64,000 bases of DNA, from contig JBHGNT010000016.1 in NCBI GenBank assembly GCA_043228905.1, forward strand, positions 5,332,001-5,396,000, in the 5' to 3' direction. Position numbers and translations under genes: made by a program. Positions 1,417 through 33,403 of the stretch are shown in pieces; within the stretch, counting starts at the first letter, position 1, and each line of letters opens with the position of its first letter. Origin of the DNA: Azolla caroliniana. Taxonomy: Eukaryota; Plantae; Polypodiophyta. A model generated the notes under the pieces. It did not search any database. It saw only the letters and a program-made list of their open reading frames with translations, and was not told the origin of the DNA.

Positions 1417-3189
1417 ATGCATCCTTCACATCTAAATTATCTCCTGATTCTCATCATTCCTTCGACATTCTGTCTCATTCGATCGTACTCAGCATATAGC
1501 ATTCAATCTGCTCGTGCCGCCCATCAAAAACCCATCGCGATCACATTTCCTGCCTATCACCTCCGTGACCGTCGATTGGCCGATTCGTCCGATCTGCTCG
1601 ACGATACTCAAGTGCAAACATATCCCATTCCCCATTATGTCACACCATCCTATAACCATCCGGTGTCAACAAGATTGTCGATCCGATCCCGACAAATACC
1701 GGATCATGGGGATGATTTGCACACCAAAGATATCATTGCGTCGACATATGAATACTCTATGCCTCTTCGTAGAGCATTGGCCGATCAATCAATCCCCGGC
1801 CCTGGCCCCGGCCCCGGCCGGGGGCTGTTGTCGCCGGACCAGCCGCAATATCGGAGCGAGGTTATCACCCTTGGCCAATCCTCGGGTCAATATTTTGCTA
1901 TTATGAAGCTCGGGACTCCGGCCATAGATGTGGCTCTCATCATGGATTCGGGGAGCGCGCTCGGCTGGGTACAATGCGAGCCATGTGACCGATGCGGGGC
2001 ACAGCAACCGGGATTCCCCATCTTCGACCCTTTGGCTTCGACTACTTTCGCCACTAATCCGTGTAGCGCGGACGGAACGGGGGAATGCGAGATTAAACCG
2101 GGAAACTCGAGCATTAACGACGGCATCACTACATCTTGCACCGGCCCCCCTAAGTCATCTAGCAAGGTGTGCGGCTACTCCGTAACATATGCCGATAATA
2201 GCACAAGCTTCGGGTGGCTGTCCAATGACACCCTTACCCTCATCTCCTCGATCAACACGACCGATCTTCCTGGGGGCCTCCTCCGGCACCCCGGCTTCCT
2301 CTTCGGATGCGGCACCCGGAACGAAGGCATCGAGACACGGTTCAACGCCTCGGGAATGCTCGGCCTCAACCGAGGCCCGCTCTCCATCGTCTCTCAGCTC
2401 GGTGTCGGAACATTCGCGTATTGCCTCCCCAGCCGATTCCGATCGGTCGACGTCTCTGGCTACCTCACATTCGGTGGAGCCAATGCCACCACCACCACTA
2501 CATCTTCTTCTTCGACACCGCCGGTACTGAAATACACCCCGATGATCCGAAACACCATATCCACCTTCACTTCGCAATTCTACTACCTCGATGTGACAGG
2601 CATGTCGGTGCACGGGAGGCGGCTCGGCATCCCGTCGAGCGCGTGGGCGATCGATCCCAGCACGGGACATGGAGGTACCGTCATCGATTCCGGGACCACG
2701 ATCACGTCATTGGTGGAGGAGGCGTATTCGGTCTTCGTGGAGGCCTTTCACGCGGAGATGGATCCGGGATTGGCATTGGTGGACCACGGGGTGAACGGGG
2801 CGACGGTGTGCTACCAGGCGTCCTCCACACCAGCCGTGCCCAACGTGACATTGCATTTAAGTGGGGGAGTGGACCTCGACCTTCGGGCCGACCATCTCTT
2901 CCGTATCGTCACGGCCTCCTCCTCCTCCTCCTCATCCGGGGGGTATAGGCAATATTGTCTCGCATTCGGCAATGCCGGGAAATTAGGCGACGGAGCAAAG
3001 AACTTCATCGGTAATATCCAGCAGCAGGATTTCCTGGTGCACTACGACCTCGCCGCTTCTCGGATCGGCTTCGCCCCCACACTATGCAATCCAATGCCTA
3101 GTGAAGGATCTCCTGTCATTTCAACATACACCATCCTCCTATATTATTCTTATCATGTGATGTTCATGGTTTGCATCTTAATCTTGTAA
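1417..3189 (+). CDS. Pepsin-like (A1B, nepenthesin/CDR1-like) aspartic protease, secreted, probable C-terminal membrane or GPI anchor; intronless
   Basis: 590-aa ORF. N-terminal hydrophobic signal peptide, GQYF...LGTP, two catalytic motifs (IMDSGS and VIDSGTT), Cys-rich QCEPCDRC segment, FLFGCG, GMLGL, FAYCL and IGNIQQQ...YDL...IGF motifs, hydrophobic C-terminal tail. Confidence 0.95.
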   Translation: MHPSHLNYLLILIIPSTFCLIRSYSAYSIQSARAAHQKPIAITFPAYHLRDRRLADSSDLLDDTQVQTYPIPHYVTPSYNHPVSTRLSIRSRQIPDHGDDLHTKDIIASTYEYSMPLRRALADQSIPGPGPGPGRGLLSPDQPQYRSEVITLGQSSGQYFAIMKLGTPAIDVALIMDSGSALGWVQCEPCDRCGAQQPGFPIFDPLASTTFATNPCSADGTGECEIKPGNSSINDGITTSCTGPPKSSSKVCGYSVTYADNSTSFGWLSNDTLTLISSINTTDLPGGLLRHPGFLFGCGTRNEGIETRFNASGMLGLNRGPLSIVSQLGVGTFAYCLPSRFRSVDVSGYLTFGGANATTTTTSSSSTPPVLKYTPMIRNTISTFTSQFYYLDVTGMSVHGRRLGIPSSAWAIDPSTGHGGTVIDSGTTITSLVEEAYSVFVEAFHAEMDPGLALVDHGVNGATVCYQASSTPAVPNVTLHLSGGVDLDLRADHLFRIVTASSSSSSSGGYRQYCLAFGNAGKLGDGAKNFIGNIQQQDFLVHYDLAASRIGFAPTLCNPMPSEGSPVISTYTILLYYSYHVMFMVCILIL

Positions 3190-5894
3190 CCTTAGGACCT
3201 TATGTATACATGAACCACACACTCTCGTTCCCAAGGGAAAATGGATCACAAACGATCTACTTCATTGGGAAATTTCTGAGCAAACGGATTTCTTAGGGCA
3301 CTACAATGTCAAGTTAAAAGTTAATGCCATTTGTCCCCACACACCGATCCATTGGTTGTGCTCCAATCGTATGGCACAAATACCCCATATCGAAATAATG
3401 GATCCTCAATATATATTACTCTTGTTATGTAAATTCCATTGGTTTGCAATTTCATGTACATAGATAGATAGATGAGGCAAATATGTTGTATGGTCAAATG
3501 AGTCCTACTTGGGGAAATGCTCTCTTGTCGCAGTGGGCCATATATGTTGCTTGTCACTTGCAAAAGTGAGGAGTCAGAAATTCAAAATTGTAATTAGAAA
3601 TTACCATGATCTTCTTGTGACATACTTCTTGTACAAACGTTTTGCGCATGGTAGTAGTTGGTCGTGCTTCGTACACAACACATACATTGAAATTGAAGAA
3701 AATAGGTATGAACTTGTAGGTTCCAACCCTGTCCTTTTATGGTTACTTTATTGGTGACTTCATGTGGATGGGAAGCATTTGCTTTTGACTTTCATGTTGT
3801 AGTAACATATCAAACTTAGATACACGTGCTCACGGAAACATTCTTCACATTAAGATTAGGAATATTATGTTGATTTTTTCCCTTAACTTTTTGTAACCTT
3901 GTCTAGTTTGATTATATACAAGATTCTAACGTCTTTCAAATGTGTGTTATAAATCGGATAACACAAGATATCACACATAGTATCACGATTCACATTTATG
4001 TAGTTGAATTGAATTTCATCACAACAATATTCCCTAGGAATATGCACTAGAAGTAGGGACTTACCCTTTCAACGTCACAATTTCAAGATGGCCATTAAAT
4101 AGAGAGCAAAGAGATCTCATGGTTGGGTAGGTCATGCATGTAAAAGGACTAAATGTTTGAATAACCAGAAAAAGGGCAAAAACCTTTGGATGCTTCAAAT
4201 CCTGGTAAATTAAAGTTTGTGTTCCTTGGATTCATCGACATCAATCACCCTACATATGTATGTAGCACAATTTAAATTCATGCCTCGACAAGCTAGTCAA
4301 CAACTTCAAGCTCATATGCTTATTTCACCATGCAATGTTTTTACTTGGCTATCCACAATTTGCTAACAGGGTCAACTACTAGGAGTTCCAAAACCTACTT
4401 ACACACATTAATGTCTACAATTATATGAGATGGGAATTACAAAATCTATTTTTTGGCCTATCCAGAAGTGTAGACCTAAATTTATATTTTCCTTGGTTCA
4501 AACTGGGAGGTAATATGGCACCTAGTTGATTTGAGAAGAAAGAAATTCTCCTTACACATTTATTCATTTGATTTATTAATCCCATCACACTAGTTTAGAG
4601 AACATCCTATATGGAGACATGAAACATTGCTAGGTATATAACATCTCTATATTATAGATCGTAGTAAAGGTTCCCATTTTGTCTCCTCCTCTTCGATGTA
4701 ATTGTCATGTATCTCTCCTCTTCTCTCTTATATATTGCTTTCTTAATTTATTATCAAATAATATTATTATCATCATCATGTGTTTAGTTTCCCTATGCTT
4801 GCCTAACACCACATCAATTGGTCTAAAATGGGTGAATATGTTGACTGGGATTTAATTGATAATAGAAAAGTAAGCTAAGTTCATAATATATTTGTGATCT
4901 CTAAAGACAAATCCCCAAGTATCTTTGCCACCCTTGCAAAATGGTATTTCGTTGAGACAATTCATTACTATAGACGGAATTTCAACAAAGTACCTACAAA
5001 TCATGTATTAATATCGATAGATAAGTAAGCACATAGTTAAGTTCAAAATCATATTACCGATTATTCAAACGTACTCACTAGTACATTCTAAAGCATATCT
5101 CCTTGTCTACTATTTGTGTGATCACGTTGAATCCCTTAATAAAATCCCTCACTATACATTTTTATATAATTGACATATAAGTACATTTTTTCCCCTCATT
5201 TCACACTCACTCACATATGACTTAATTGACATATTGGTACATTTTCATCTAATTGCATGCTCATGCACAACCAACTCATTCATTCCGGCATTTGGAGCAT
5301 TTCAATAGATACATTTTTTGATTGAAAAGGAATAAACAAACAAAAGCGAATTTAGGATATGCTTTTTATTTTTATATAATGGCGTGCACGATCAACTCGT
5401 TCATATAGAGTATGTCAATGGATGCCTTTTTTTTATTAAAGAAGTATAAAGAAACAAAACAAAAAAAAGAGATATTATTTCATTTTTAGGTGATGATGTT
5501 GAGCCTCTTTAACAAGTAAAGTCCGCAATGTTTGAAGTCTATTGCACGATTATTGATGCTTTACACGCTACACATTAAGTTGTAAGCAATAATTATAAGT
5601 GTTTATGAGAAGACATATTAAGGTCATGCAATGAAAGGATTACGTGGAGCATTCTTATATATTATGGAGCCCATGCAAATTGTTAGCATTGTCTTTGTAC
5701 GCGCAATGTTATTGTTTACATTTGTTTTTAAAAAAATTTCCAACAATGGTTTGTAATATATATTATGTCTAAAGGGATTTAACTGATATATGGACATTTC
5801 CAAATATTCTTAACAACTTCATCATGGATTTAAATGTCGCCATGTTGTTACGCATGAAACTTGTTGTTAGCGTGTCAAGACTTGAACCCATGTT

Positions 5895-6503
5895 TTTTTT
5901 CCATAAAAAATATCCTCCATTGGTATTAACTTAAAGTGGCCAAAGTCAATATATAAAATAGTCAACTATTACAAAGAATATTGCAACATATTAACTAGAA
6001 AACTATTGAACACTCATGTAGCTTCCACAATCCAACCACATTTAGTATCCATATCAAGGAAGGAATTACCACCAACAACAATGGGTTCAAAAAACCCCTC
6101 TTTTTACAAGCTGAATATGGATTTTTGACCTTTAGCACTGGAGTCTATGCCACTGCAAACTTGAAATCCAAAGAAACTATTATTGCATCTGGAGACACTC
6201 CCTCAAGTTGTGAACAAGCTTTGATAAGGGCCACAAAAATGTGTTGTACCATATATTGCTCAACATTCCTTCTATTTTGATGCAGTTTGATAGCATCATA
6301 TGGCATTCTCCATCTCACATAATGCCTGCTAAGGACAATGGATGACTGCTCATTTTGATTAGCCAGCTTCTCCAAAGCACGCCTCAACCTTACTTCCAAG
6401 GTTCACAAAGATAGGTTACATCTCTCTAACATGCATACAAAATCAGCCACCTTTAGAACTCCATACAATTTGAACAAAACTTTGCCGATGAATTCCAATG
6501 GTT
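5895..6503 (-). pseudogene. Retroposed degenerate PPR-gene fragment with A-tail, flanked by a 17-bp TSD
   Basis: AGACTTGAACCCATGTT occurs at 5878-5894 and 6504-6520, with a T-run at the left end (A-tail on -). Minus-strand translation gives PPR remnants (FVALIKACSQL; IHIQLVKRG...GNSFLDMDTKCGWIVEAT*VF) broken by stops and frameshifts. Confidence 0.8.
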
Positions 6504-6610
6504 AGACTTGAACCCATGTTGTTAAGCATGTGATTACCTCAACACTAACATGTTTACATGTTGAAAAGTTTAGAAATATGTTATAGTAAATTGTAACTCA
6601 AACTCGCAAT

Positions 6611-7346
6611 AGTTGCAGGGATAAAGGCATATCTGATGACTTGTTGAAGTCGATTTGGAGAAGACTATGGGCATTCGATATGCCAGAGAAAATAAAGCTT
6701 TGGTTGTGGCTTCTTAGCCATCGGGCGATACATGTGGGGGAGTGGTTGAGGTGTCGTAGTGGGGAGGCTAGTTGCAAGATATGTGGACATTCTTTGGAAT
6801 TGATCCCTCACTGTTTTTGGATTAGCATTTGGGGTAGAAGTCTCAGTATCGTGGCATCATGTGGTGTAAATGGGAGAGTTGTATAGGGGTCCTTACAAGG
6901 GCTGAAGTCAACAGGGGAAGGCTGGGCCGAATAGATAAACCCTCATGGTCATGGATTTATAGTGCAAGGTGGCAATGTGTTTCAATGTCCTAGAGTTTGA
7001 CCTGGCACAAAATCAACATTTTTTGAGGAGATATGGATGATGGTGGCTTGCTTATTGGTTTGGCACATTTGGACCAAGCGTTGTAAGTCTGTATTTCAAC
7101 AACAAAAGCTCCCAAGCGGTGAGGTGTTGTTAAACATATGGTTTGAGCTGGTATCTTGGTTGCGGGGACGGTACGACTCGATTCAGGGGGAATCAGATGA
7201 AGCAAAAAGAGCTCGGTCAAAGTTTCTACTGAAATGGGGCAGTTCCTTTATGGTGGTCAGATCATCATCAAGGCCTAAATGGAACTACCAAGCCCCCATA
7301 TGGTTGTTTTTGCCAATGGCTTCCATTAGTGACCAGGAGTTGTAAA
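6611..7346 (+). mobile_element. 5'-truncated L1-type LINE (LINE-A), ORF2 C-terminus; its 3' UTR resumes after the nested insertions
   Basis: zf-RVT-like KIKLWLWLLSHRAI...CKICG...HCFW, then WHIWTKRC and terminal WNYQAPIWLF. Stop at 7345 directly precedes the LINE-B TSD. Confidence 0.85.
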
Positions 7347-9659
7347 TATGTATAGTTGTGTTTTTTTTTCTCCCAAAAAAGATACTACATTAGTATTAGA
7401 AAACACCATAAGGCTAAACATACAAGATATACCACCGATCCCCTATGTTTTTCTAAGTTCTAACCATTGGCTTAAATAAATACTTTGGTGTTGAGTAGAA
7501 CCACTCCACCTTATCAAAACACCGTCTATAGAATATACCTATGTCCCAAATGGCATGAAACTCCAAACACTTAAGCTTTGCTTGATGCGTATTACCTTTT
7601 ATACTATCCAAAAACCCTATGAGATTATGCACAATCTCTATCCAAATTCTCGAAATTATTTGGGTAGGTCTTTCAGTCACATTTTGAAAGACCTTCAAAC
7701 ATCGAACCTTCCAAATCTACCAAATTGTAATACTACAGTTTACCAATTGCCATATTTGAGGTTTATTAGTTTGTATTTGTGGATTCAGAGTGATCATATT
7801 TTTTCCCATCAAACCATGCCTCATTACAATAGCATCTACAACCTCCTCTTGTTCATATACCATAGGTTTATCATGTACCACCGCCCATAATACTGCACCC
7901 CCTGTATACACTACTATAGGATATATTGGAGCTAATAATTTTATGATTCGTTTCCATATGTCCAGAGCAAAACCACAACTCCACAAACAATGTTTAGCAG
8001 TCTCTATTACATATGTATAGAAAGGGCACATCTTGTCTACATTTCCTTTTCGCCACCAATTAACTGGTATAACATTATGAACCAACAACCATCGAAAACA
8101 AACAAATTTCCTACTCATCTTTATACCCCATAGCAATTTCCAAAATTGTTTGAGATGTTGTGGAGAAAGTCCATTTTGTCTCCAAATAACATTTGCAGTT
8201 AGTTCTTTCCATGATCTAACACCTAATATTTTCCTACCAATCTTCACAGAATACTGAAAGAACGACACTTATTTGATGTGATCTTGCACTCACACCTTCC
8301 AATACAGTTGTCCAAGATCCCAAGTTATTCTAGATATTGGTCTCCTTTCCATAATCCAAATCCTCCAAAAATAATTCACCTTTTGAGGATCCGGGTCTAA
8401 GACCCAATTTGAATCATGATTTGCAATCACCCTCACTTCTTTATGCAAACAAAACCTAAACAAATCATTTTCCTTAGGTGTAAAGAGTAGCTTCCATCAT
8501 CTTGTACATCAAAACTCATACACTCTTGTTCCCCAATATAGGCTTTAACTCCAATTAAAACATCCAATGGAGTAAATAAACCCATCCATTTCTGTGTAGC
8601 AGATCCAATTTGCATCTGAGTATTAAAAAGGGCATTTTGTATTGCATAATACATTATCTTCCCACCCCTTACATTACGAATTAGTATCATTTGTTGATCT
8701 ATAGGTTTAGACAGAAATGTTGTCCATGCACCTATAGATTGTGCTGGCCCACGATCTAATTCTAACCATGCACATCTAGTACGCATTACCAACATCTACC
8801 CTCTTTGGTCAATCCACCATTAATTCCAAATTAGGGGTTGTCTAAAGAATTCAGATTCTTTTTTTGGCAATGTCTTAATTAAATCAAGAGAAATATCTTT
8901 CCATGCATTAAGAACACATTGAGCAAATCTCTCTTCCCAGTTTGTGGCCATAACCAATTTGTTATGTTCCAGAAAAGCCCATCTAAAACTAGGCCTCCAA
9001 TCTCTACCAGTTTTGGGACAAAACTTTTGCAATTCATAAAACAACAATGGTTTCCAAGGTTCCGATCCTGGCAACAATCTTCGAATCACCAATTTTGCAA
9101 TCAAAGCTTTGGACTATTGTAATGGATCAACAATCCCTAATCCTCCTTGATCCAATGGCTTAACAATTGTGGACCAAGAGACTTTTGCCTTGGCATGGCT
9201 TCCATCATTACGAGACCAGAAATAATTTCGAATCAAACTCTGTAATTGTCCCATACATGATCTTGAAAAACTCCAACATGACATAATATACCAAAGACTA
9301 GACAACAAAACTTCATTAATGACTATCACTCTACCCGCAAATGATAGTTTAGCTTTACTCTAAAACAATAGTTTTGATTTTATTTTCAATAACAAAGAAG
9401 CAACCTGAATTTCTGAAGAAATATTCAAACCTACTTGACATCCCAAATATCTAATTGAAGTGCCCTCGGGAATCCATCGGAAATCTGGATGAGAACTCCA
9501 TTGTGGAGTTGTGGAATTGGACGACACCAAAAAACCCACTGATTTATTCCAATTAATTGATGCACATGAAGCCATACGAAATGTTTGCATTGTTGTGTAC
9601 ATTTTTTGTTACAGATTATTATTTTGACCATCCAGATAGAAACTTGTATCATTAACAAA

Positions 9660-10065
9660 TGTTGAGAATCAAGCTCAACTTGGTCTAGTGTGTGAACTCA
9701 CCTTGAGAGTGAATAGACATTCCAACGGTCAAGAGTTACCATTAAGTCACCTCTTTGTATTCTAGCATTTAGTATGAGTCATAGAATCATATTCTATGAC
9801 ACATAACTTATGAGCTTTCACATTCCCCATGCTCCATGAGCCTTGTAGTTAATGAAAAGAGAGGGTGACTACATAAAGCACCCTCCTCCCACCTTGTATA
9901 GTGTTGAGTCTTTCTCCTTTGATAATATACTTTTACCTTGCGTATTCTCTGTGTATTATTCCTTGTCTCTCTCTCTCTCTCTCTCTCACTCTCTCTCTCT
10001 CTCTCTCACACACACATAACTCATATCTCTTCCGCTTCACAAGAATCCATATCCGATTCTTTACA
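9660..10065 (+). repeat. Copia 5' LTR (406 bp, internal (CT)n(CA)n microsatellite)
   Basis: Starts TGTTGAG, ends TTTACA. Near-identical to 21720-22127, with about 7 substitutions counted by eye plus microsatellite differences. Confidence 0.97.
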
Positions 10066-21719: not shown

Positions 21720-22025
21720 TGTTGAGAATCAAGCTCAACTTGGTCTAGTGTGTGAACTCACCTTGAGATTGAATAGACACTCCAATAGTCAAGAGTCACC
21801 ATTAAGTCACCTCTTTGTATTCTAGCATTTAGTATGAGTCATAGAATCATATTCTATGACACATAACTTATGAGCTTTCACATTCCCCATGCTCCATGAG
21901 CCTTGTAGTTAATGAAGAGAGAGGGTGACTACATAAAGCACCCTCCTCCCACCTTGTATAGTGTTGAGTCTTTCTCCTTTGATAATATACTTTTACCTTG
22001 CGTATTCTTTGTGTATTATTCCTTG

Positions 22026-22068
<43 letters not shown>

Positions 22069-22127
22069 TACACACACATAACTCATATCTCTTCCGCTTC
22101 ACAAGAATCCATATCCGATTCTTTACA
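21720..22127 (+). repeat. Copia 3' LTR (408 bp)
   Basis: Repeat of 9660-10065, followed by TSD ACAAA. Confidence 0.97.
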
Positions 22128-26245: not shown

Positions 26246-28576
26246 CTTCTTTTTTTCCAAAAACATCTACTACCATTAGTTAAGAATGTACAAAGGAATC
26301 ATTTACAACTCATATCTTACAAGACATCTTGCATGTCAAAGGAAAACAATGTGTAGATGAAACAACATAAAAAACAACTCCAAAACACCACATCATTCTA
26401 TGTGTATAGCATTACTCGAACACATATTCTCCACGTGAGCCTCATACAAAACAGAATTCAGCATAGATGTCCTCCATTCGCTCCTCATGGCAGCACCCAT
26501 CTAGATGTTAGGAACACTTGGAGGGAACAGCCACTGCGGTGGTTGATAATTCCACTTCACTTTACCATCCATTATCTGCAGCATCGACGAACCACTCCAT
26601 TTCCGAAGGAATCGAGCTCTAGCTTCTTCACTTGCATCAGATGGCCCTTGAAGACTTTCAAACTCACCTCGCAACGTAGAAATAAGATTAAACCATATCA
26701 TCATTAAATTCTCAGCCGGTGGGGTTCGTTTACCTGCGAGGGTCTCCTTGCACCGAGATACCCACACTTGCCAGACCGTAAGGCCGACCACTAATACCCA
26801 TATGTCCACGTAGCGTTCTTGTAAGAAGAATAAACCTCCTTGCGTTGCTGGTTGCACAGATCCTTGATTCACCATTAAAGAAGGACTGTTTCCATTCCAC
26901 CCTTGAAACCACGAGACCGATTCAATGGCCAACCAAGTGATTGCTGCGCTCGATACATGAACCTCAACCTCAAAACGAGCCAAGATTCTTAAGCTCCTCA
27001 GCCAGATTTCTTGCGCTCGTGGGCAGCACCACAAACAATGAGCGATGTCCTCCAAGCTCGCACTACACGCCTTGCAACCACTCATGCCGCCTCTATTCCC
27101 AAGCCACTCTCCCGTTGGAATAGCCCGATGGGTGATTAACCAGAAAAACACTACACGCCTTGCAACCACTCATGCCGCCTCTATTCCCAAGCCACTCTCC
27201 CGTTGGAACAGCCCGATGGGTGATTAACCAGAAAAACACTTTGATCCGCTCGGGAAGGGATGAGTTCCATATCCTGCTCCTGGTTCTATCCACGAAGACT
27301 GAATCGATAGCTGCATGGGTCCACTTGTTGGCACATTTCACGATACGAACCTAACTTTCTCCCCAAGCGCGTCGAGTATTCGAAGAAACCTAGTGATTTA
27401 GCTTGTTCTCCCTTCCACCTATATTCAGCGGGATCCCATTCTACGCGCTCGAGAGGCTTGCCTTCAACCACGTACAAGATCCAATCCTCCTCGACCTCTT
27501 CGACTGGTGGATTCACCTTCCATTTCTTTCCGTGTCTTGCCACAATTCTAATAGGGTACCAACCTGCACTTTCATCTAATAATCCCATCAGGACGGTCTT
27601 CCCACTCTTTCCTAGACCCCTGACATTGATAATATTTCCGGTACCATCACATTGTCCAGACCATTCACCCTCTTCCTCATTACCAATAGGAAGCGAGGAG
27701 ACAGTTGTATAACCTACGTCAAGCATCTTTCTGCCATTTCGGACCTTTCCCATGTCTTCATATAATTGATCACGATTACTGCCGGACAACCGCAGCCAAT
27801 CAGCCACCGAGTGTATCCCTAGATAATGCAATATAGCCCACGGCATGCGCTTGCTTTGTCCAAGCATCATTCCTTCTGGTGATTGCACGGTCTCGTTCCA
27901 CAATAGGGGTTGGCGCATCCATTCAGCACTAGTACTTGGACGATTCCGACTTAGATGCCCACGAAGCATACTCCACGCCTGCATCACTGACATACAAGTA
28001 CGATCAGCCAATCGGTTAGATTTCCTCAATTTTAAGTCCATGCAAAAAGGCCACGCTTTGTGTGACTTCCATTGCCCACCCAGTCTTGGACTCCATAGAA
28101 TGCTCCTATTATGTATCAATGTTTTCCATAACTCATCACCGGGTAGCAAGCTTCTTACCAATATCTTACATAACAATGCCTGACTCTGCAATCCAGGGTC
28201 AACCAATCCTAAACCCCCCTTACTCTTGGGAAGAATCAATGTGGACCATGATACTTTGGCTGCCGCATTGTCTTTCCTCATCCCAGCCCAAAGAAATCCC
28301 CTAATACACGCTTTAACAGTACGAATAACTTGTTTGTCAAACATCCACACTGAAACTGCATGCCATAATGTAGACAAAAGCACATGGTTAGCTACTATGA
28401 TCCTGCCAGCCAATGATAAGTTCACCCTTGACCAGTTGCGAATTTTGTCACAGATTTTGCTTTGAATATGCTGCAGCTGAATTCCCTTGTCAATATCTAC
28501 CCCAATCCACGTTCCCAGATACCTAGTGGGTTCCTCGTTTGCAATCCATTTGAATTCAGCATTTGGCTTCCAAACT
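26246..28576 (-). mobile_element. 5'-truncated L1-type LINE (LINE-C)
   Basis: ORFs 27286-28425 (LSLAGR...GGLGL), 27093-27341 and 26501-27169 (zf-RVT, WNYQPPQWLFPP). T-run at about 26250. Possible short TSD CAATCTT at 26239-26245 and 28577-28583. Confidence 0.88.
27061..27240. repeat. 88-bp tandem duplication inside LINE-C
   Basis: Copies start at 27061 and 27149, with 1 mismatch seen and CACT microhomology at the junction. Confidence 0.9.
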
Positions 28577-33339: not shown

Positions 33340-33390
<51 letters not shown>

Positions 33391-33403
33391 GAGAGAGAGA
33401 GAG
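33340..33403. repeat. (GT)n(GA)n microsatellite
   Basis: Directly visible. Confidence 0.95.

What the first reader, a model, noticed from the sequence alone, without database searches (positions are those of the whole stretch)
5878..6520. Retroposed PPR fragment wearing a LINE-type 3' tail: candidate gene-derived non-autonomous retroelement
Seen: a 609-bp insert with a perfect 17-bp TSD and an A-tail, whose body translates to scrambled PLS-PPR motifs. Its last 30 nt or so (sense TAATACCAATGGAGGATATTTTTTATGG-An) closely resemble the 3' end of LINE-B (TAATACTAATGTAGTATCTTTTTTGGGAG-An). The TSD is perfect while the PPR body is heavily decayed, so the template was probably already a decayed pseudogene when copied. 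Established: L1-type machinery makes long TSDs and can mobilise other RNAs, and some SINEs borrow LINE 3' ends. Inference: either a PPR/LINE template-switch chimera, or a member of a SINE-like family built from host PPR sequence that could spread PPR modules or seed PPR-targeting small RNAs.
Basis: partly seen in the sequence, partly recalled or inferred. Interest (0 to 1): 0.8.

Follow-up and report, generated by a model that had tools for sequence, protein, structure and literature searches.

The report
Truncated PPR-carrying LINE-tailed retroposon copy
The 609-base insert is real, but it is one shortened copy of a many-copy plant jumping element whose tail end carries a dead piece of a PPR gene followed by a LINE-type terminal signal. 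The PPR/LINE fusion is therefore old and inherited, not made at this spot.

Summary
Observation confirmed. Window 5895-6503 (minus strand) is flanked by an exact 17-bp target-site duplication and ends in an A-run. It contains a decayed PLS-type PPR fragment. Its last ~28 nt match the 3' end of the neighbouring LINE (7370-7398) at 20 of 24 positions, the only such site in the window.

Interpretation partly supported. I recovered 16 distinct related copies from public ENA contigs.
- Seven of these show the same tail followed by unrelated 3' flanks.
- Five copies, counting the window's, start at different internal points.
- Several others continue well upstream of the window copy's 5' end; six of them, aligned, share at least 110 bp there.

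So the window insert is a 5'-truncated member of an element at least 1.2 kb long. It is not a complete SINE-like unit, a one-off PPR processed pseudogene, or a template-switch chimera made here. All premature stops in the PPR frames are shared by the copies, so the master was already dead.

Most likely mechanism: LINE target-primed reverse transcription, with the LINE-class terminal motif as the recognition tag. Related tails also end a third LINE in the window and another element in a public contig.

Unresolved: whether the master is an autonomous LINE with a long 3' UTR or an ORF-less composite. No ORF2 lies within ~1.2 kb upstream.

The scan reported similar PPR-carrying LINE tails elsewhere in this genome (s1-500916, s1-507422).

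The parts
5878..5894 (.). Target-site duplication, copy next to the element's poly(A) end
   Evidence: Exact 17-mer also present at 6504-6520; only two matches in the window, none expected by chance.
5895..5900 (-). Poly(A) tail. The T-run on the plus strand spans 5893-5900; two of its bases overlap the TSD.
   Evidence: Read directly. Other copies carry A4 to A10 at the same place.
5901..5928 (-). LINE-class 3' terminal motif
   Evidence: 20/24 match to LINE-B at 7375-7398, the only site in the window with 4 mismatches or fewer. Conserved in copies L002, L006-L009, L012 and L014. Related to the tails of LINE-C and of an element in L013.
5929..5994 (-). AT-rich 3' region between the PPR fragment and the terminal motif, with no PPR or LINE similarity detected
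   Evidence: Conserved among family copies (A1). No match to the LINE-B or LINE-C 3' UTRs beyond the terminal motif.
5995..6503 (-). Decayed PLS-type PPR-derived body, split over two frames with five stop codons. Its 5' end at 6503 is a truncation point.
   Evidence: Frames and stops. PDB hits to PLS9-PPR for 6017-6103. Stops shared by all copies. Public copies continue upstream of 6503 (A3).
6017..6103 (-). Best-preserved PPR piece, covering the end of an L motif and an S motif
   Evidence: phmmer against PDB: 5iww_D E=1.8e-8, 9kfx_A E=7e-6.
6504..6520 (.). Target-site duplication, copy next to the truncated 5' end
7361..9697 (-). LINE-B: a 5'-truncated LINE. Its 3' end (A9 at 7361-7369, motif at 7370-7398) is the comparison tail.
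   Evidence: zf-RVT domain at 7720-8268. tblastn map. Tail read.
26250..26283 (-). 3' end of a third LINE (LINE-C, body up to at least 28572), with a related terminal motif plus A7
   Evidence: Sequence. zf-RVT in 26504-27169. Homology to LINE-B ORF2.

Best explanation
Window 5895-6503 (minus strand) is a 5'-truncated retrocopy of a multi-copy non-LTR retroposon family.

Structure. The 3' portion of the family's template RNA has three parts: an already dead, internally rearranged fragment of a PLS-class PPR gene; about 65 nt of AT-rich sequence; and a ~28-nt terminal motif plus poly(A). That motif is of the same class as the 3' ends of the resident zf-RVT-bearing LINEs.

Mechanism. A LINE endonuclease/reverse transcriptase nicked the target and primed on the poly(A) and terminal motif of this RNA. 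It copied about 600 nt and stopped early. Second-strand joining then produced the 17-bp TSD.

Shown: the TSD, the A-tail, many dispersed copies sharing the 3' end, variable 5' ends, a longer master, shared stops and the tail similarity.

Inferred: that the terminal motif is the recognition tag ('stringent' 3'-end recognition, as described for some plant L1 lineages), and which LINE supplied the enzyme.

Not resolved: whether the master is an autonomous LINE with a long gene-fragment-bearing 3' UTR or an ORF-less composite element. I put these at roughly even odds.
For: - TSD and tail.
- 16 distinct public copies (L001-L003, L005-L017), 73-95% identical to each other or to the window copy.
- Seven public copies carry the tail; six of them (L002, L006-L009, L012) also show the 3' flank, and each flank differs immediately after the A-run.
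- 5' ends fall at window-equivalent 6503, 6466, 6397, 6240 and about 6150, each with unrelated flanks.
- The 5' flank of L003 is Copia pol (E=5e-15).
- L007 has an 11-bp TSD.
- L002, L005 and L008-L011 share at least 110 bp of conserved sequence upstream of the window copy's first base, where the window has only its TSD and flank (A3).
- L009 carries at least 1.16 kb of family sequence before the tail.
- All five stops in the PPR frames are shared among copies.
- The window copy is 4.1% from the family majority, so a perfect 17-bp TSD is unremarkable.
- PPR identity.
- Tail match to LINE-B is significant, and related tails occur on LINE-C and in L013.
- The concept of stringent 3'-end recognition in plant L1-clade LINEs comes from PMC3747384.
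Against: - No full-length master was recovered and no partner LINE with an identical tail. LINE-B differs at 4 of 24 positions and has no PPR in its 83-nt 3' UTR.
- No conserved hairpin in the tails (fold z-scores near 0), unlike the classic stringent-type LINE/SINE tails.
- TSDs could not be found for L002, L006 or L009.
- The public contigs are short, low-coverage pieces from unnamed ENA assemblies. That they come from this or a related fern is an inference from shared repeats.
- Copy number in this genome was not measured.
Confidence: 0.85

Rival explanations
1. Sub-reading A: the master is an autonomous LINE. The window insert is simply the last 609 nt of its unusually long 3' UTR, which had earlier taken up PPR and other host gene fragments.
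For: - The pattern of 5' truncation and a shared 3' end is what a LINE family gives.
- The tail is of the resident LINE class.
- Earlier follow-ups in this scan reported such LINEs in the same genome (s1-500916, s1-507422). I did not verify those reports.
Against: - No ORF2-like sequence lies upstream of family sequence in any of the 16 contigs, by tblastn with LINE-A, B and C proteins.
- At least 1.16 kb before the tail in L009 is non-coding and consists of ~170-bp tandem units.
- The by-eye MAP-kinase resemblance in that region was not supported.
Confidence: 0.45
2. Sub-reading B: the master is an ORF-less composite retroposon, comparable to Sadhu or SVA. It would be built from host gene debris plus a LINE 3' end, be transcribed from its own or a flanking promoter, and be mobilised in trans.
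For: - No coding capacity in 1.2-1.5 kb of family sequence.
- Several structural subfamilies differ by blocks and tandem units.
- L013 and L014 begin homology at the same point with different upstream flanks.
Against: - No 5' terminus is confirmed by a TSD.
- No promoter or RNA-gene head was found.
- The contigs are too short to exclude an ORF further upstream.
Confidence: 0.4
3. The insert is a one-off processed pseudogene of a PPR mRNA. Its tail would just be that gene's own AT-rich 3' UTR.
For: PPR genes are mostly intronless and are thought to have expanded by retroposition (my own background knowledge). The insert has a TSD and an A-tail.
Against: - Many copies with different flanks and variable 5' ends.
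- Stops are shared by all copies.
- The PPR part stops in mid-array, with no E/DYW end.
- The tail matches LINE ends.
Confidence: 0.02
4. The insert is a chimera made at this locus, when a LINE reverse transcriptase jumped from LINE RNA to a PPR transcript during this insertion (a Buzdin-type chimeric retrogene).
For: The order LINE 3' end, then other RNA towards the 5' side, is what template switching would give. Such chimeras are documented, for example in Magnaporthe (PMC2104539, listed).
Against: The identical junction and 3' region occur in at least seven other copies with other flanks. Template switching remains possible as the ancient origin of the master.
Confidence: 0.02
5. The copies arose by DNA-level duplication or recombination of a chimeric region, not by retroposition.
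For: TSDs were not detectable for three copies.
Against: - Homology ends exactly at the A-run in every copy that reaches it.
- There is a nested series of 5' ends.
- TSDs of 17 and 11 bp are present in the window copy and L007.
Confidence: 0.03

Closest known systems
LINE-tailed SINEs and 'stringent' 3'-end recognition in plant L1-clade LINEs, e.g. maize/sorghum ZmSINE2 with monocot L1 (Ohshima 2013, PMC3747384)
   Same: A non-LINE body ends in a terminal sequence shared with resident LINEs, followed by poly(A). Copies are dispersed and have TSDs.
   Different: - The body derives from a protein-coding PPR gene, not a tRNA, 7SL or 5S gene.
- The element is at least 1.2 kb long.
- No pol III head was found.
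- No conserved hairpin in the tail.
Sadhu non-autonomous non-LTR retroposons of Arabidopsis (PMC2848041)
   Same: Non-coding, poly(A)-ended, TSD-flanked, often 5'-truncated, with divergent subfamilies and presumed LINE mobilisation.
   Different: Here the body contains a recognisable host-gene fragment, and the 3' end resembles resident LINE ends. I did not check whether Sadhu has either feature. No sequence relationship was tested.
L1 transduction and composite elements such as SVA; gene-fragment capture by plant TEs (Bs1, Pack-MULEs; review PMC13317346)
   Same: Host gene fragments are carried along and amplified by a retroelement's machinery.
   Different: Documented plant cases involve LTR elements and DNA transposons. 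The 2026 review states that 5' transduction has not been reported in plants. Here the carrier is a LINE-type tail in a fern.
Template-switch chimeric retrogenes (Buzdin type; Magnaporthe example PMC2104539)
   Same: A LINE 3' end is fused to a copy of another cellular RNA. This is a plausible origin for the ancestral master.
   Different: Those are single-locus products. Here the chimera is the template of a whole family.

Membership tests
Non-LTR (TPRT) retroposition product | Target-site duplication flanking the insert | tested here: met
   Exact 17 bp. An 11-bp TSD in copy L007.
Non-LTR (TPRT) retroposition product | 3' poly(A), with homology ending at it | tested here: met
   A6-8 in the window and A4-A10 in the tail-bearing public copies; six of those also show a 3' flank, all different.
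Non-LTR (TPRT) retroposition product | Variable 5' truncation among copies sharing the 3' end | tested here: met
   Five different 5' ends within the last 609 nt, and longer copies beyond them.
SINE with LINE-derived tail | Internal pol III promoter head (tRNA, 7SL or 5S derived) | tested here: inconclusive
   None in the insert or in up to 1.2-1.5 kb of family sequence (ARAGORN, Rfam). The master's true 5' end was not reached.
SINE with LINE-derived tail | Short unit length (under about 700 bp) | tested here: not met
   Family sequence spans at least 1.16 kb in L009.
SINE with LINE-derived tail | 3' end shared with a resident LINE | tested here: met
   20/24 match with LINE-B, unique in the window. 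Related tails on LINE-C and in L013. No LINE with an identical tail was found.
Autonomous LINE (insert as its 3' end) | ORF2 contiguous upstream in longer copies | tested here: inconclusive
   tblastn with LINE-A, B and C proteins finds no ORF2 upstream of family sequence in any locus. The contigs are 2.7 kb or shorter.
PLS-class PPR gene or pseudogene | Recognisable P/L/S motifs | tested here: met
   S-type motif: 5iww_D E=1.8e-8, 9kfx_A E=7e-6, and 3.4e-11 for L003. Pfam is below threshold.
PLS-class PPR gene or pseudogene | Intact reading frame | tested here: not met
   Five stops and a frame change, shared across copies.
Ordinary processed pseudogene | Independent copy of a functional mRNA with that gene's own 3' UTR | tested here: not met
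   The family is multi-copy with shared stops, the PPR array is cut in mid-motif, and the tail is of the LINE class.
Template-switch chimeric retrogene made in situ | Junction unique to the locus | tested here: not met
   The same junction occurs in L002, L006-L009, L012 and L014.

The most novel reading that the evidence does not exclude
A fern LINE lineage that recognises a specific ~28-nt 3' terminal sequence may have spawned an ORF-less, pol II-type composite retroposon. It would be assembled from dead host gene pieces (PLS-PPR and others) plus the LINE end, and would since have diversified into subfamilies by gaining and losing PPR sub-blocks and tandem units. That would make it a plant counterpart of SVA or Sadhu, and a natural example of LINE-driven host-sequence transduction, which a 2026 review says is unreported in plants.
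Probability: 0.35. Interest if true: 0.5.

Novelty: new member of a known kind. Interest (0 to 1): 0.3.

Why it matters
This copy is an ordinary dead, truncated insertion. The family is mildly interesting for three reasons:
- It shows fern LINE machinery amplifying host PPR-derived sequence.
- It gives a concrete conserved terminal motif with which to test sequence-specific 3'-end recognition by fern LINEs.
- It warns annotators that many 'PPR pseudogene' hits in this genome may be transposon cargo rather than decayed PPR loci.

It does not spread working PPR modules.

Tried and rejected
- **Pfam on stop-free pieces.** No PPR reached threshold in pieces of the insert or of the other copies.
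- **Exhaustive HMMER search.** The 85-aa open piece returned only other family copies and one spurious low-complexity protein, and no true PPR. That piece alone therefore does not prove PPR origin.
- **ESM Atlas features.** Only weak PPR/TPR leads, all below 0.9.
- **MAP-kinase resemblance.** A by-eye resemblance in the upstream family region, prompted by earlier scan notes, got no support from Pfam or PDB phmmer. I dropped it.
- **Hairpin in the tails.** No conserved hairpin; fold z-scores are near 0 and there is no common structure.
- **TSDs of other copies.** None found beyond chance for L002, L006 or L009.
- **'Same 5' end' in L002.** My first impression that L002 shares the window copy's 5' end was wrong. 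L002 continues upstream with family sequence.
- **Last word search.** A search with an upstream tandem-unit ORF found nothing, so I could not walk further upstream.
- **The search of earlier findings by sequence.** Blank.
- **Not run.** No structure or complex prediction was attempted, because the pieces are dead fragments.

Full report
**What is at the coordinates**

On the plus strand the 17-mer at 5878-5894 recurs exactly at 6504-6520 and nowhere else in the window. Even with two mismatches allowed, no shuffle gave two matches. Between the two copies lie 609 bp, whose sense strand is the minus strand.

The insert ends in an A-run: a T-run at 5893-5900 on the plus strand, two bases of which overlap the TSD. 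Just before the A-run is a ~28-nt terminal motif at 5901-5928.

**Is the body PPR?**

The minus strand has no long open frame. PPR-like text is split over two frames with five stops. Several searches failed to show PPR:
- Pfam reports no PPR for any stop-free piece.
- An exhaustive HMMER search with the longest piece (85 aa) found only other copies of the same element plus one spurious low-complexity hit.
- The protein-language-model look-up gave only weak PPR/TPR leads.

The decisive support comes from PDB sequences. The 29-aa piece window:6017-6103:- matches the designed PLS9-PPR protein (5iww_D, E=1.8e-8) and a synthetic PPR-DYW protein (9kfx_A, 7e-6). The match is on the S-type repeats and not the P-type ones. 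The homologous piece of copy L003 scores 3.4e-11. A diverged relative (P0013, in L012) keeps a weak Pfam PPR hit (E=0.006-0.008).

So a decayed PLS-class PPR fragment is present. The PPR text stops in the middle of an S motif near 5995 and is followed by about 95 nt that are not PPR.

**Is the tail LINE-like?**

LINE-B is a 5'-truncated, zf-RVT-bearing LINE on the minus strand at 7361-9697. It ends in a motif at 7370-7398 plus A9.
- The insert's 24 nt before its final T-run differ from the LINE-B tail at 4 positions.
- In both strands of the window, every other site has at least 7 mismatches.
- Block shuffles give 0.005 sites per window at 4 mismatches or fewer.
- Both sites sit directly before a poly(A) run.

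A third LINE (LINE-C; zf-RVT at 26504-27169, body to at least 28572) ends at 26250-26283 in a related motif plus A7. A further tail of the same class abuts the 5' end of copy L013.

The similarity is therefore real and belongs to a class of LINE 3' ends. It is a sequence motif only. The tails have no common or unusually stable fold, with z-scores near 0.

**Is it a family?**

Three searches recovered 16 distinct short contigs from ENA assemblies (L001-L003, L005-L017; L004 duplicates L002):
- a word search with the 85-aa piece;
- an exact 24-mer scan of public metagenome contigs;
- a second word search with an upstream ORF.

The A-type copies are 82-95% identical to the window copy. Seven public copies carry the terminal motif and A-run. 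Six of them (L002, L006, L007, L008, L009, L012) also show the 3' flank, and after the A-run every flank is different.

The 5' ends form a nested series, each with unrelated upstream DNA:

| Copy | 5' end, window-equivalent coordinate |
|---|---|
| window | 6503 |
| L001 | 6466 |
| L003 | 6397 |
| L006 | 6240 |
| L007 | about 6150 |

The upstream flank of L003 is a Copia polyprotein (51% identical to the window's Copia ORF, E=5e-15). L007 has an 11-bp TSD. The 3' flank of L012 is a LINE RT region. These are independent retroposition events.

**The insert is not a whole element**

L002, L005 and L008-L011 continue upstream of the position equivalent to 6503. Over at least 110 bp they share well-conserved sequence there, while the window has only its TSD and unrelated flank (alignment A3).

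L009 carries at least 1.16 kb of family sequence before its tail. This includes ~170-bp tandem units.

There are structural subfamilies:
- L008 and L009 lack two blocks of the PPR part.
- L012 is a compact version.
- L013 and L014 have another upstream part.
- L010 diverges into different PPR-like text.

These differences are documented. The window insert is thus a 5'-truncated copy.

**State of the template**

All five stops in the PPR-like frames are present in every copy that covers them, so the master RNA already carried a dead PPR fragment.

The window copy is 4.1% from the family majority, with 3.1% private changes. At that divergence a 17-bp TSD pair is expected to carry about one mismatch, so a perfect TSD is unremarkable. 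There is no paradox between a 'perfect TSD' and a 'decayed body'.

**Mechanism**

The simplest account is target-primed reverse transcription by a resident LINE enzyme. It would act on an RNA that ends in the LINE-class motif plus poly(A). Early termination gives the 5' truncation, and staggered target nicks give the TSD.

That the motif is the recognition tag is an inference. It rests on the motif's conservation across family subfamilies that are otherwise 73-90% identical. It also rests on the published idea that some plant L1-clade lineages need a specific 3' end ('stringent' type; PMC3747384).

How the ancestral PPR/LINE-tail fusion arose was not tested. Candidates are template switching, read-through from a PPR pseudogene into a truncated LINE, or insertion into a LINE 3' UTR.

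**What remains open**

I could not reach the master's 5' end.
- No LINE ORF2 lies upstream of family sequence in any contig.
- No tRNA or Rfam head was found.
- The last word search was blank.

Earlier follow-ups in this scan, on other pieces of the same (fern) genome, concluded that similar PPR-bearing inserts are truncated copies of LINEs with long 3' UTRs carrying gene fragments (s1-500916, s1-507422). That lead made me look for longer copies. My data agree on 'truncated copy of a multi-copy element'. They neither confirm nor exclude the LINE ORF. The MAP-kinase piece mentioned in those notes was not detectable in my upstream sequences.

**Comparison and novelty**

The element works like a LINE-tailed non-autonomous retroposon, or like a LINE 3' end. 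It fails the SINE definition on length and, so far, on the head. It resembles Sadhu (PMC2848041) and SVA-type composites in being non-coding, poly(A)-ended and 5'-truncated.

Gene-fragment capture in plants is documented mainly for LTR elements, Pack-MULEs, CACTA elements and Helitrons. A 2026 review states that 5' transduction has not been reported in plants (PMC13317346). The family is therefore a modestly new example of a known kind. This particular copy is ordinary.

Noticed in passing
window 6617-7345 (+) and 7361-9697 (-): A plus-strand LINE fragment (zf-RVT at 6644-6886, ORF ending at 7345) is interrupted 15 nt after its stop codon by the poly(A) end of the minus-strand LINE-B. These are nested LINE insertions. 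The PPR-bearing insert lies about 100 bp upstream of the plus-strand fragment's detectable start.
   Followed up: partly
window 26250-28572 (-): A third LINE (LINE-C), with ORFs of 222 and 379 aa and a zf-RVT domain. Its 3' end carries a variant of the same terminal motif plus A7.
   Followed up: partly
window 9811-10005 vs 21871-22053: Near-identical repeat (97% at the translated level) next to (CT)n/(GA)n microsatellites at about 9966-10031, 22030-22090 and 33340-33400. It probably belongs to the LTRs of the Copia/Gypsy elements at 10-22 kb.
   Followed up: no
window 1417-3189 (+): Intact 590-aa ORF for a nepenthesin/TAXi-type aspartic protease (TAXi_N 1.6e-35, TAXi_C 2.7e-32). It is GC-rich relative to its surroundings.
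   Followed up: partly
L013:75-112: Another LINE-class tail plus A7 lies immediately upstream of the 5' start of a family copy. This suggests insertion next to an existing poly(A), or tandem retroposition.
   Followed up: no
L010:1075-1331: This copy leaves the family consensus at the window-equivalent of 6356. It continues with different, better preserved PLS-PPR-like text (weak Pfam PPR hit, E=0.07). It could be a subfamily with another PPR block, or closer to the donor.
   Followed up: partly
L009:389-835, L008:1-430, L011:238-620: The upstream part of the family consists of ~170-bp tandem units in variable number, with no recognisable coding similarity.
   Followed up: partly
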